NCBI GenBank assembly: GCA_030264375.1
Contig: JASCQW010000112.1
Location: 28,054,906-28,118,905 of the forward strand
Length of the DNA stretch: 64,000 nt
Direction of reading: 5' to 3'
Origin: Carcharhinus longimanus
Taxonomy: Eukaryota
This document shows positions 34,401 through 37,400 of this stretch, piece after piece (position 1 is the first letter of the stretch; each line of letters begins with the position of its first letter). The position numbers and the translations under genes are program-made. The notes under the pieces are model-generated. The model was not told the origin of the DNA and did not search any database. It saw nothing but the letters and a program-made list of their open reading frames with translations.

Positions 34401-37400
34401 AACTGAAGTATAGATATTTCTGGTCTTGCCTGCTACAGGAACCATAATGAGTGGGACAGAAAATTTGGCGGACCATTTAATGTTGACCTCAAGTGGGAAT
34501 TTCATGTCTTGGGCACACATGGCTGGAAAATTCCACCCTTGAACTTAAGGAATTGAGATATGGAGAGTGCACATGCAAATGGAGTTGAGGAAAATGATCA
34601 GCCATAAAAATTGTACTGAATAGCAGAGCATGTTTAAGAGATCACATGGTCTACTCCTGTAGCTATATTACTCACCTGTGCAATAGCCCACTTCACCATT
34701 GGACCACAAGCCAAAGATGCTCTGTTGACTATTTCGTAGTTGTAGCTTGGATTGGACATGTAGTTTTTCTTCATCTTCTCACGAATAACATCACTGATGA
34801 ATAAAAATGAACAATGTTAATACAACTGCCCTCTTGAAATTTTAGGGACGGAAATTTATCAGTGTGCTAGAGCGCTAGTTAAAAATTAGGTGGTGCATAG
34901 CAATGAAGAGCTGCAACACAGTCAAAATGCAAGATAAATGTGATTTTTAAAATAAAAATAATGAATACCTTAATTCTTCAGTATTAAAGTTGACTATGCT
35001 GGTGATGAAATTATCTCTGATAATAACTTGTCTGATCTTTTTCCAGTCATTTGTCTCCTCACCCAGCAGGAGACAGATTGATTCTAACGCGAGTTTTACT
35101 GCAGCAGGTGGATTGGCCATGGCTCTCACTTCAACAAGATGCTGCTTCTTTATAGAGCTCACAGCTAATAGAGGGGTGAAAAGAAAGGGGCCATAAATGG
35201 ACATGCAAAAGGATAAGGGTGTATACAGCCACTGGGATTTGAAAGGAAATCTTTTACTTGAAGACCAGCAGTACATTGTGTCACCCAAACAGCAAATTTC
35301 TTTGGTAATAAATGCTATGCCTAAAATCTTTTAAAATTCGATTCAATTATTAATTGCTTTGGTAGTTTTTCAGCTTTAAGCTTTGGCTGGTCTTCTGGGC
35401 AATTTCCTTCTAACCCAGCAACTGCATGCACCCCATTATTCACCTGATTTCGTCAGCTGAAAAATTTACTATGGTCGGAATGAAGTTTTCCCTCATAATG
35501 ATCGATCGGATTTGTTTCCAGTCAGTTGTACTTTCGCCCAGGAGAAGACAGATTGACTCGAGTGCTAGCTTCACTGCACCTGGCGGATTAGCCATTGAAC
35601 GAACCTCTACCAAGTGCTGCTTCTTGATCGATTTTACAGCTAATCAGACCAGCACCGTAGGCCACAGTGCAAATAAACAGTAAGAGAAAGTGAAGATTAG
35701 GGGAGAAGAAAATCGAGAGATAAACACCACACAGAAAAGATCAGTTATTCAGTTGTTTAAAAAGGTAGAAAATTAATAGGATTATAGTTCCAAAAAATAT
35801 AAACTAAATAAAATGTTACTACAGATAGCAATTCAGCATACTAGATAAATTTCATTAAAAGATATATTTTATAGAAAAAGCTCAATTCAAAACACATCTA
35901 ACCATTCTGAGCCTCAATAACAGCAGGCTCTACCATGTCCAGATCTTCCTTTACTTTCATCTGTTTGTCAGCAATAATTTCCTGTTGCTTGTGAAGCTGC
36001 TCCTGAATTTCTTGACTCATAACCTATCAAAGATAGTGAAAATGTCTCATTTGATCAGGCTTTGCTCTGAGCCCAAAATTTTCATTCCAAATGAAGAGTT
36101 CTTGAGCTAAATTACCTTTTTCTTTTCAGCTTCTTGTTGATCCTTCACCATTTTCTTCAACTTATCATTGGCTGCTGCATTTTTAACCTCCAATTCTTGG
36201 CTCTTAATTCTCAGATCACGCCGCAATTCCTCAACCTGAAATGAGTGAAATTTTCTTTTTAAAAAAAAGCAAGCATTTATCATGACATTTCCATTGCAAG
36301 TCAATCAGAGCCACCTTGCATTAGTATCCAGGTCTACATTTACTTGGAGCAAAAGCTGTTAATATTCTTTGGTTTACTGGTAAAAGAAAATATTTTTACA
36401 CATTAACAAATAAATGAACACTAGAAAAATATGATATCCCTGAAAAAAAAGGATGGCCAAAGGTAAGAGAAAAAATCCATATTGGATTTACAAAAATGTA
36501 AGATGTTTAGTAAGGTTTTCTGCCATTTCTGTGCTTAATACAGGTAGCGGTGTAGATGGAGAAACCAACCACCATTTGGAGCATTAGCCCTTGAGGCCTC
36601 AATGATACTTAGATACTACAAGACATGAGCCACCATACCAAAGGGGAATTTAATTTCATTCAATCTTGCACATACATTAACGTCTCAAGCCAATATAGTG
36701 TACAAGTCTAATGTGAAGATCTCAAAGGATTAGTTCAGACAAAAGCAGCGAACTTGCTGTGTGTTAACTTAATAATCATTAACATTAACGTACAAAATTT
36801 GCAAGGTTAATACTTGGGGAATAGTTATATGAAATCCAAAAGGATGGGAGAAATGGGGAAGAAAGGAAACAAGTCATGTTAGATTTACAAGATGCAACAG
36901 TATCTTTACGAGAAAGCGAAATCCATATTAGTATGCATTCTCATAACCACAACACAAGATTCTTGGATCTTTACTAGTTGTTAGTTAACAATATTAGTAC
37001 CATATCTGTACCTTGCTCAGAAACAAATACACCCAAGTTTAGGCCAAAAAATCTCAAAATAAAAGCCACTGCTCAAACAGAATCCCAAAGCTTAGTGAAA
37101 AATTCCTTCAAACAGCACAGTAAAAGTTTGGCACCATGATTACCAGGAAAAAAAACTTAAATTATGCATTGCGATTTTATGACTTGACGACCATACCTGA
37201 TCTACTGTTTCCTTTATCTTTCTCAGACCAACATTTAAATGCATCTGTTGCTCCTCCAATTCACTACGCTTTTCATTGAACATGTTGGCATAGTGGTTAA
37301 TGAAGTCCAGATAGTGGCGAGGAGTGATTGCCATTATTCTGCCTCCACGTTTGGCCAGCCGAGTATTTGCCTAATAAGAAAAAAATACTTGTACTTCAGC

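What the first reader, a model, noticed from the sequence alone, without database searches (positions are those of the whole stretch)
34969..35639. Tandem duplicated, mutually exclusive exons give cytoplasmic dynein-1 two alternative microtubule-binding domains
Seen: two intact 196-nt exons (A 35444-35639, B 34969-35164) sit between the CC1 exon and the MTBD H6 exon. Both have AG/GT sites and both run phase 1 to phase 2. 48 of 64 full codons encode identical residues, with many synonymous changes and no stops or indels. The flanking introns are not similar to each other, so this is an old duplication under purifying selection, not a recent copy or an assembly duplicate. 196 mod 3 = 1, so including both or neither shifts the frame, the classic signature of mutually exclusive exons. 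Knowledge: this segment is most of the MTBD (about human residues 3295-3360), and to my recollection mammalian DYNC1H1 has one constitutive exon here, matching copy A. Inference: this lineage can swap the track-binding foot of its main retrograde motor by splicing. I recall B-like sequences in some teleost dync1h1 models, which would make the switch ancestral to jawed vertebrates and lost in mammals, but I cannot verify this.
Basis: partly seen in the sequence, partly recalled or inferred. Interest (0 to 1): 0.92.

Follow-up and report, generated by a model that had tools for sequence, protein, structure and literature searches.

The report
Dynein-1 gene with two swappable microtubule-binding exons
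The gene for the cell's main inward-moving motor, cytoplasmic dynein-1, carries two old tandem copies of the exon that encodes most of its microtubule-gripping foot, and spliced transcripts use one copy or the other, so this animal makes two versions of a motor usually described as having one form.

Summary
Two 196-nt exons on the minus strand (A 35444-35639, B 34969-35164) have AG/GT sites and the same phases. They share 48 of 64 residues and 137 of 196 bases, and the similarity stops at the exon edges.

Spliced contigs from four public runs of four closely related labelled organisms show the upstream exon joined to B and B joined to the downstream exon in 4 of 4 runs. The matching A joints appear in 2 of 4 runs. 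No A+B joint and no skip-both joint was listed. Either would give an early stop codon. B is the only assembled form in two runs and the deeper form in a third.

The exon encodes human DYNC1H1 residues 3296-3359 (helices H1-H4 of the microtubule-binding domain). Copy A is 62/64 identical to the mouse/human chains. Copy B forms its own clade: 27 sequences including the window's, 23 distinct, one from the teleost Coryphaenoides rupestris, where A and B also lie in tandem. Twelve positions separate all A from all B. None lies in H1, and most lie in or next to H3 and H4, beside K3336 and R3344, whose mutation impairs processive movement.

Nine literature searches found no description of this in vertebrates. 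Loss in mammals and the exact age of the duplication were not tested.

The parts
35444..35639 (-). Exon A, 196 nt, phase 1 to 2. It encodes the mammal-like version of MTBD helices H1-H4 (human DYNC1H1 3296-3359).
   Evidence: It is 62/64 identical to mouse/human PDB chains. Joints 35639->35903 and 34793->35444 appear in runs X1 and X2.
34969..35164 (-). Exon B, 196 nt, phase 1 to 2. It encodes the alternative version of the same MTBD segment.
   Evidence: It is 49/63 identical to mouse/human chains. Joints 35164->35903 and 34793->34969 appear in X1, X2, X4 and X9, and long contigs of 5441 and 7325 nt carry B only.
35903..36021 (-). Upstream constitutive exon (end of stalk coiled-coil CC1, ...[10 protein letters not shown]). 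Its last base starts the split codon.
   Evidence: Contig pieces in all 4 runs and the ORF.
34677..34793 (-). Downstream constitutive exon (MTBD H5-H6, ...[39 protein letters not shown]). The low end is uncertain by 1 base.
   Evidence: Contig pieces and the ORF.
35640..35902 (-). Intron before exon A, 263 nt. It has a 162-nt AG-exclusion zone and a weak proximal pyrimidine tract (0.60), with a pyrimidine-rich stretch further upstream.
   Evidence: and the sequence.
35165..35443 (-). Intron between A and B, 279 nt. This is too long for steric exclusion. Exon B's acceptor has a strong pyrimidine tract (0.78) and a 65-nt AG-exclusion zone.
   Evidence: No joint across this intron alone is listed.
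34794..34968 (-). Intron after exon B, 175 nt.

Best explanation
[quoted passage not shown] A tandem duplication of the 196-nt exon that encodes MTBD helices H1-H4 produced copies A and B. Each mRNA takes exactly one copy. Taking both or neither shifts the frame into an early stop, so such products would be truncated and probably removed by nonsense-mediated decay (inferred). The result is two heavy chains that differ only at 16 residues of the microtubule-binding foot. H1 and H2 are almost unchanged. The changes sit in the H2-H3 loop, H3, the H3-H4 loop, H4 and the start of H5, next to residues (human K3336, R3344) whose mutation weakens microtubule binding and processive movement. I infer that the two forms differ in how tightly or on which microtubules the motor holds, and that the choice is set by cell-type-specific splicing factors. 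Shown: the exon anatomy, the frame logic, both spliced forms, different A:B depths among runs, and orthologous B exons elsewhere. Inferred: the biochemical difference, the regulators and the decay of mis-spliced forms.
For: Anatomy and divergence. Frame consequences. Spliced forms: the B joints occur in 4 of 4 runs and the A joints in 2 of 4. In X2 two 250-nt contigs carry B (depth 79.1) or A (depth 29.9). The joint table lists both branches joined to the same two flanking exons, with 26-28 bases on the shorter side. In X1 depths are A 133.8 and B 75.6-94.3. In X4 and X9 the long contigs (5441 and 7325 nt) hold B only. Identity of the segment: (E 1e-28 to 1e-35 to DYNC1H1 3296-3359). Conservation: B-type sequences were found. 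Twenty-seven B-type sequences were compared, 23 distinct, against 6 A-type, 4 distinct. There are 12 fixed differences, and E at position 36 and V at position 46 are invariant in B. In the tree the 14 B rows form one clade (98/88) and the 4 A rows another (95/91). The A-then-B order recurs in Coryphaenoides rupestris KAG7247558.1 and in two unnamed ORFs, P0273 and P0274. AF2 on the B peptide (pLDDT 83.8) gives helices at 6-13, 20-32, 40-47 and 52-57. None of the 16 differences lies inside H1, and 13 of 16 lie at positions 36-64. K3336N and R3344Q lie at the MTBD-microtubule interface and cut processivity and velocity (bioRxiv 10.1101/092791, passages read). The window's A/B differences at 3337, 3343 and 3345 flank them. 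Exon differences seen in relatives are few and silent: 2 synonymous in A and none in B.
Against: All RNA evidence comes from assembled contigs of runs whose RNA status is the tool's guess. Contigs drop rare variants, so absence of A+B, of skip-both, or of A in X4 and X9 is not proven. The runs are from close relatives (0-3 differences per exon), not demonstrably the source individual, and their tissues are unknown. No protein-level evidence exists for either form. The B orthologues come from ORF collections, which can only hold intact ORFs, so broken copies would be missed. Codon-level dN/dS among B orthologues could not be computed because no DNA was available. In the 4.1 A cryo-EM model H3 and H4 sit higher above the microtubule than once thought (PMC6629372, sections 5 and 6 read), so the changed residues may not touch tubulin directly. 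No functional difference between A and B has been measured.
Confidence: 0.85

Rival explanations
1. Both exons are truly spliced in a mutually exclusive way, but the two proteins are biochemically equivalent. The pair would then persist through partitioned splicing regulation (each copy needed in different cells), not through a difference in microtubule binding.
For: H1 and H2 are nearly identical in A and B. K3336 and R3344 are kept in both. Many substitutions are conservative (I/V, M/I, E/D, T/S). H3 and H4 lie above the microtubule surface in the best model.
Against: Twelve positions are fixed between the clades over a long time. These include S to E in the H2-H3 loop, Q to K/R next to K3336, and P to S/T/G in H4. 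B keeps its own invariant residues (E36 and V46 in 23 of 23 distinct sequences). That pattern fits selection for a distinct state rather than drift.
Confidence: 0.2
2. Exon B is an unproductive or decaying duplicate, a poison exon or pseudo-exon, and A is the only functional form.
For: Mammalian structures and the review literature know only the A form.
Against: B-only mRNA keeps the frame. It is the only assembled form in X4 and X9 and the deeper branch in X2. B has no stop or indel. A versus B gives pN 0.165 against pS 0.81. Intact B exons occur in 26 further sequences fetched here, one from a named teleost.
Confidence: 0.02
3. The two copies are an assembly artefact, alleles, or two paralogous genes collapsed into one locus, not two exons of one gene.
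For: None beyond the general possibility. Both RNA branches share identical flanks, which two recent paralogues could also do.
Against: The copies differ at 30% of bases while the introns are unrelated. Both have their own canonical splice sites inside one intron-exon series. The same A-then-B order is seen on contigs of other organisms, including single ORFs that read from A through a short intron into B. A low-depth unspliced contig in X1 spans 35136-35473, from exon B across the intron into exon A (record 2).
Confidence: 0.02

Closest known systems
Mutually exclusive exon in the cytoplasmic dynein heavy chain (DHC1) of Schistosoma mansoni (Pillmann et al. [quoted passage not shown]
   Same: Same gene family. 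A homologous candidate exon of identical length with split codons at both ends, judged mutually exclusive (passages read).
   Different: It is a flatworm, and the case was predicted from sequence as a software test. [quoted passage not shown] The passages I read give no RNA evidence, no vertebrate case and no link to microtubule binding.
Mammalian DYNC1H1, described as a single isoform of 78 exons (Schiavo et al. 2013, PMC3824068, passage read)
   Same: Orthologous gene. Exon A is 62/64 identical to human/mouse residues 3296-3359.
   Different: Here a second, B-type exon is present, spliced and often predominant. Whether mammals keep any trace of B was not tested.
[quoted passage not shown] 2017 (PMC5740500)
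   Same: Same architecture: adjacent homologous exons of equal length and phase, one chosen per transcript. In myosin the alternatives also remodel parts of a motor (this last point is recalled, not read here).
   Different: The gene and the domain differ. No competing RNA structure of the Dscam kind was found here.
[quoted passage not shown] 2019, PMC6629372)
   Same: Variation in the H2-H3 region changes how a dynein engages the microtubule. The flap reaches the neighbouring protofilament (passages read). Two of the fixed A/B differences lie in this loop.
   Different: The flap is a 13-residue insert fixed in separate paralogous genes. It is not a splice choice within one gene, and B has no insert.

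Membership tests
Cytoplasmic dynein-1 heavy chain, microtubule-binding domain | Sequence match to the DYNC1H1 MTBD | tested here: met
   A: E 1.7e-35 to 2.1e-33 against the 11 distinct vertebrate DYNC1H1 sequences in the PDB, over residues 3296-3359. B: E 1.2e-28 to 1.3e-26 against the same chains. Yeast and Dictyostelium chains score lower.
Cytoplasmic dynein-1 heavy chain, microtubule-binding domain | Short-helix bundle (H1-H4 within this exon) placed between CC1 and H5/H6 | tested here: met
   The AF2 model of the B peptide (pLDDT 83.8) has helices at 6-13, 20-32, 40-47 and 52-57. The flanking exons encode the end of CC1 and H5-H6. The whole MTBD with B was not folded because joining exons was left out.
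Cytoplasmic dynein-1 heavy chain, microtubule-binding domain | Binds microtubules | not testable with these tools
   Needs co-sedimentation or single-molecule assays.
Mutually exclusive exons from tandem exon duplication | Adjacent homologous exons of equal length and phase with canonical splice sites | tested here: met
   196 nt each, phase 1 to 2, AG/GT, 75% residue identity.
Mutually exclusive exons from tandem exon duplication | Transcripts contain exactly one of the two | tested here: met
   A-only joints in 2 of 4 runs and B-only joints in 4 of 4. No joint between A and B and no joint skipping both was listed. Contigs show presence, not absence, so rare double or skipped forms are not excluded.
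Mutually exclusive exons from tandem exon duplication | Both or neither is incompatible with the reading frame | tested here: met
   Stop at codon 11 of B when read after A. Stop at codon 7 of the next exon when both are skipped.
Mutually exclusive exons from tandem exon duplication | Both copies conserved in other species | tested here: met
   Tandem A then B in Coryphaenoides rupestris KAG7247558.1. Twenty-seven B-type sequences including the window's, 23 distinct. B clade 98/88 and A clade 95/91. All but one are unnamed, so the taxon range is not known.
Mutually exclusive exons from tandem exon duplication | Regulated, tissue- or stage-specific choice | tested here: inconclusive
   A:B depths differ among runs: X1 134 to 76-94, X2 30 to 79, and B only in X4 and X9. 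Tissues are unknown, and contig depths are a poor measure.
Exclusivity by steric hindrance (intron between the pair too short) | Intron between the two exons below about 60 nt, or branch point of the second exon close to the first exon's donor (threshold recalled) | tested here: not met
   The A-B intron is 279 nt, and the AG-exclusion zone before B is only 65 nt.
Exclusivity by competing RNA structures (Dscam type) | Docking and selector sequences that pair | tested here: inconclusive
   The best inverted repeats are 22 nt at 73% and 17 nt at 76%. The fold around the exon A acceptor has z -0.98. There was no orthologous intron DNA to test covariation.
Exclusivity by U2/U12 spliceosome incompatibility | One intron of the U12 type (consensus donor recalled) | tested here: not met
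   The donors gtgaat, gtattc and gttaga do not fit the U12 donor consensus as I recall it. This was judged by eye only.

The most novel reading that the evidence does not exclude
The 'one heavy chain, one isoform' picture of cytoplasmic dynein-1 would be a mammalian peculiarity. On this reading non-mammalian vertebrates have, since at least the common ancestor of this lineage and teleosts, run two dynein-1 motors with different track-binding feet. The non-mammalian B foot would be the main form in some tissues, tuned for a different microtubule affinity, processivity or microtubule subtype. The same exon would also have been duplicated in tandem more than once in animals (the unnamed ORF P0275, and perhaps Schistosoma), marking the MTBD core as a recurrent site for diversifying the motor by splicing.
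Probability: 0.4. Interest if true: 0.88.

Novelty: new member of a known kind. Interest (0 to 1): 0.78.

Why it matters
Functional diversity of dynein-1 is usually put down to accessory chains, adaptors and regulators acting on a single heavy chain. Here is a conserved splice switch inside the microtubule-binding domain itself, expressed at levels equal to or above the mammal-like form.

That would add a layer of regulation at the motor-track interface. It also offers a natural experiment: 12 fixed substitutions around H3 and H4, beside residues mutated in human cortical malformation, that selection has held in two alternative states.

The question is directly testable. One can swap the B residues into recombinant dynein or MTBD fusions and measure affinity, landing rate, velocity and run length on differently modified microtubules. 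One can also delete either exon in zebrafish.

It bears on using fish as models for DYNC1H1 disease as well, because a variant in exon A would leave B-form dynein untouched.

Tried and rejected
Third copy or other duplicated coding exons in the window. tblastn with both peptides and an all-against-all of 603 minus-strand ORF pieces found only the A/B pair. The other matches are interspersed repeats.

RNA structures that could choose between the exons. The inverted repeats are weak, and the fold around the exon A acceptor is not better than shuffles (z -0.98). I dropped this line.

Naming the organisms that hold B. The listing of cluster members on 19 proteins named only one, Coryphaenoides rupestris. 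The protein-atlas search gave only unnamed clusters. Full-length named vertebrate proteins could not be reached. The length filter of the search for homologous proteins needs a query of about 2,700 residues or more, and the only long ids I held (P0115, P0119 and others, 50-69% identical in this region) would have pulled in their own relatives. A and B isoforms would also fall into one 90% cluster. I left the third protein search unused.

The window's own taxon. There are no large transposon ORFs to use, and I did not pursue it.

Dating the duplication against invertebrates. The 64-column tree places the B clade beside a poorly resolved group that holds A plus 30 unnamed rows (92/85). With so few columns and no names I draw no conclusion.

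Literature. Nine searches were answered. Seven of them looked for prior description. They found only the Schistosoma case and Kollmar's remark. Genome-browser annotations (RefSeq, Ensembl isoforms) could not be consulted and may already model both forms.

The search of earlier findings never opened.
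Full report
WHAT IS THERE. [quoted passage not shown] Between the exon that ends the stalk helix CC1 (35903-36021) and the exon for MTBD helices H5-H6 (34677-34793) lie two 196-nt exons, A (35444-35639) and B (34969-35164). 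Both follow an AG and precede a GT. Both begin with two bases that complete a codon started by the last base of the upstream exon. Both end with two bases completed by the first base of the downstream exon.

The copies share 48 of 64 residues and 137 of 196 bases. Twenty codons are identical, 28 differ only synonymously and 16 change the residue, with no stop or indel. The synonymous proportion is 0.81, which is saturated, against a non-synonymous proportion of 0.165.

The repeat ends 2-5 bases outside the exons, so the introns are unrelated. There is no third copy in the window.

IS IT USED. I laid Logan contigs of four runs (X1, X2, X4, X9) on 34200-38400. They carry four organism labels and come from four studies. 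The tool only guesses that they are RNA. However, the contigs skip every intron at GT..AG (printed as CT..AC on the + strand), so they are spliced.

The pair 35903-35164 and 34969-34793 (B) occurs in 4 of 4 runs. The pair 35903-35639 and 35444-34793 (A) occurs in 2 of 4 runs (X1, X2). No joint from A to B and no joint skipping both was listed.

In X2 two 250-nt contigs carry either B (depth 79.1) or A (29.9). The joint table lists both branches joined to the same two flanking exons. In X1 the depths are A 133.8 and B 75.6-94.3. In X4 and X9, contigs of 5441 and 7325 nt run from the downstream exon through B into four upstream exons, and A is not covered at all.

Contigs show presence, not absence, and depths are rough. 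The runs are close relatives of the window's source (0-3 differences per exon). The only differences inside the pair are two in exon A of X2, and both are synonymous. With those limits, both mRNA forms exist, and B is the main or sole assembled form in three of four runs.

WHY ONLY ONE. 196 is not a multiple of three. Read after A, exon B hits a stop at its 11th codon. With both skipped, the next exon hits a stop at its 7th codon.

The A-B intron is 279 nt, and the AG-free zone before B is 65 nt, so steric exclusion does not apply. The donors do not look like U12 sites (by eye, consensus recalled). I found no convincing pairing elements. The frame, with decay of mis-spliced RNA (inferred), is therefore the visible safeguard, and the choice itself must be made by splicing regulators.

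One hint: exon A has a 162-nt AG-free zone and a weak proximal pyrimidine tract, with a pyrimidine-rich stretch further upstream. Exon B has a strong, ordinary acceptor. From memory, long AG-free zones go with distant branch points and regulated exons. I did not test this.

WHAT IT ENCODES. Both peptides match DYNC1H1 residues 3296-3359 in PDB chains. A is 62/64 identical and B 49/63. Every vertebrate chain in the PDB is A-type.

An AF2 model of the B peptide, built on an alignment of 56 sequences (pLDDT 83.8), has helices at positions 6-13, 20-32, 40-47 and 52-57, which I take as H1-H4. The 16 differences lie at positions 2, 14, 20, 36, 38, 42, 45, 46, 48, 50, 54, 55, 60, 61, 62 and 64. None is inside H1, one is at the first residue of H2, and 13 are at 36-64.

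In Lacey et al. 2019 (PMC6629372; sections 5 and 6 and passages read) the MTBD has six helices and binds at the tubulin intradimer interface. Binding mainly moves H1 and CC1, H6 contacts alpha-tubulin, and H3 and H4 stay higher above the surface than in the older model. The H2-H3 loop is where axonemal dyneins carry a flap that reaches the next protofilament.

In Hoang et al. (bioRxiv 10.1101/092791, passages read), K3336N and R3344Q lie at the MTBD-microtubule interface. They lower the frequency, distance and speed of processive runs and raise diffusive behaviour. Both residues are kept in A and B. The A/B changes sit right beside them, at 3337, 3340, 3341, 3343 and 3345.

I therefore infer a tuning of binding strength or lattice preference rather than a change in the basic binding mode. 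This step is inference only. I did not fold the whole domain with B, because joining exons was to be left out.

IS B CONSERVED. A full scan of 1.84 billion representatives with the B peptide and two word-indexed searches returned many short ORFs from genomic contigs. These read from a pyrimidine-rich intron end through a B-type exon into a GT-AT... donor.

I fetched those clearly above the A-type identity level. Twenty-seven B-type sequences including the window's, 23 of them distinct, were compared with 6 A-type, 4 distinct. Twelve positions are fixed between the types: 2, 14, 36, 38, 42, 45, 46, 48, 54, 55, 61 and 64. E36 and V46 are invariant in B. B varies at 28 columns and A at 5, though the samples are unequal.

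In a tree of 60 rows the 14 B rows form one clade (98/88) and the 4 A rows another (95/91). With 64 columns, deeper forks are open.

One B sequence has a name. NCBI KAG7247558.1 of the teleost Coryphaenoides rupestris is a partial model that strings the upstream exons, A and then B together. Two unnamed ORFs (P0273, P0274) read from A through a short intron into B. So the tandem order is shared, and the duplication is older than the split between this lineage and teleosts.

There are limits. ORF collections cannot contain broken exons. All but one source is unnamed. I set aside 31 unnamed hits of about 74-79% identity as possibly human-like. No DNA of orthologues was available for dN/dS.

WHAT IS KNOWN. 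Seven searches aimed at prior description found no account of alternative MTBD exons in vertebrate dync1h1.

The nearest items are these. Pillmann et al. 2011 (PMC3228551) use a predicted mutually exclusive exon 'in the middle' of Schistosoma mansoni DHC1 as a software test. [quoted passage not shown] Hatje et al. 2017 on human MXEs mentions dynein only in a reference title.

Supplements were closed and genome-browser annotations were out of reach, so both forms may well be modelled there already. The kind of mechanism is familiar. The gene, the domain and the expression level are what is new as far as I could see.

VERDICT. This is a real, expressed, conserved pair of mutually exclusive exons that gives dynein-1 two microtubule-binding domains. 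My confidence in that is about 0.85-0.9. A functional difference between the two is plausible but unmeasured, at about even odds. Loss in mammals and origin in the jawed-vertebrate ancestor remain untested. Interest 0.78.

Noticed in passing
P0275 (unnamed Logan ORF, 298 aa; no window coordinates): One ORF on a genomic contig reads through two tandem copies of the homologous MTBD exon in some other lineage. Neither copy is vertebrate A- or B-type. Tandem duplication of this exon may therefore be recurrent in animals. No name could be obtained.
   Followed up: partly
P0015 and P0056 (unnamed proteins, 937 and 746 aa): These proteins have four to five tandem repeats of an MTBD-like H1-H2 motif (…NPP..VK…LG…). 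What they are is unknown.
   Followed up: no
window 35393-35420: A 28-nt stretch in the intron just after exon A is 71-75% like the same piece of both exons (family D2). It may be chance or a relic. tblastn sees no third copy.
   Followed up: partly
window 35640-35802: A 162-nt zone without any AG lies before exon A's acceptor, against 65 nt before B and 30 nt before the next exon. This suggests a distant branch point.
   Followed up: partly
window 34200-34250 and 37905-37939: Contig depths in the thousands, with many loose ends in all four runs, point to pieces of an abundant interspersed repeat inside the introns.
   Followed up: no
window 40091-40660: An ORF fragment resembles the start of a LINE-type endonuclease (recalled resemblance). 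It borders a masked N run inside an intron. The N run was left as it is.
   Followed up: no
window 34291-34621, 35136-35473, 35611-35932: Run X1 also holds low-depth (5-13) unspliced contigs over the introns around A and B. This fits pre-mRNA or a little DNA in that run.
   Followed up: no
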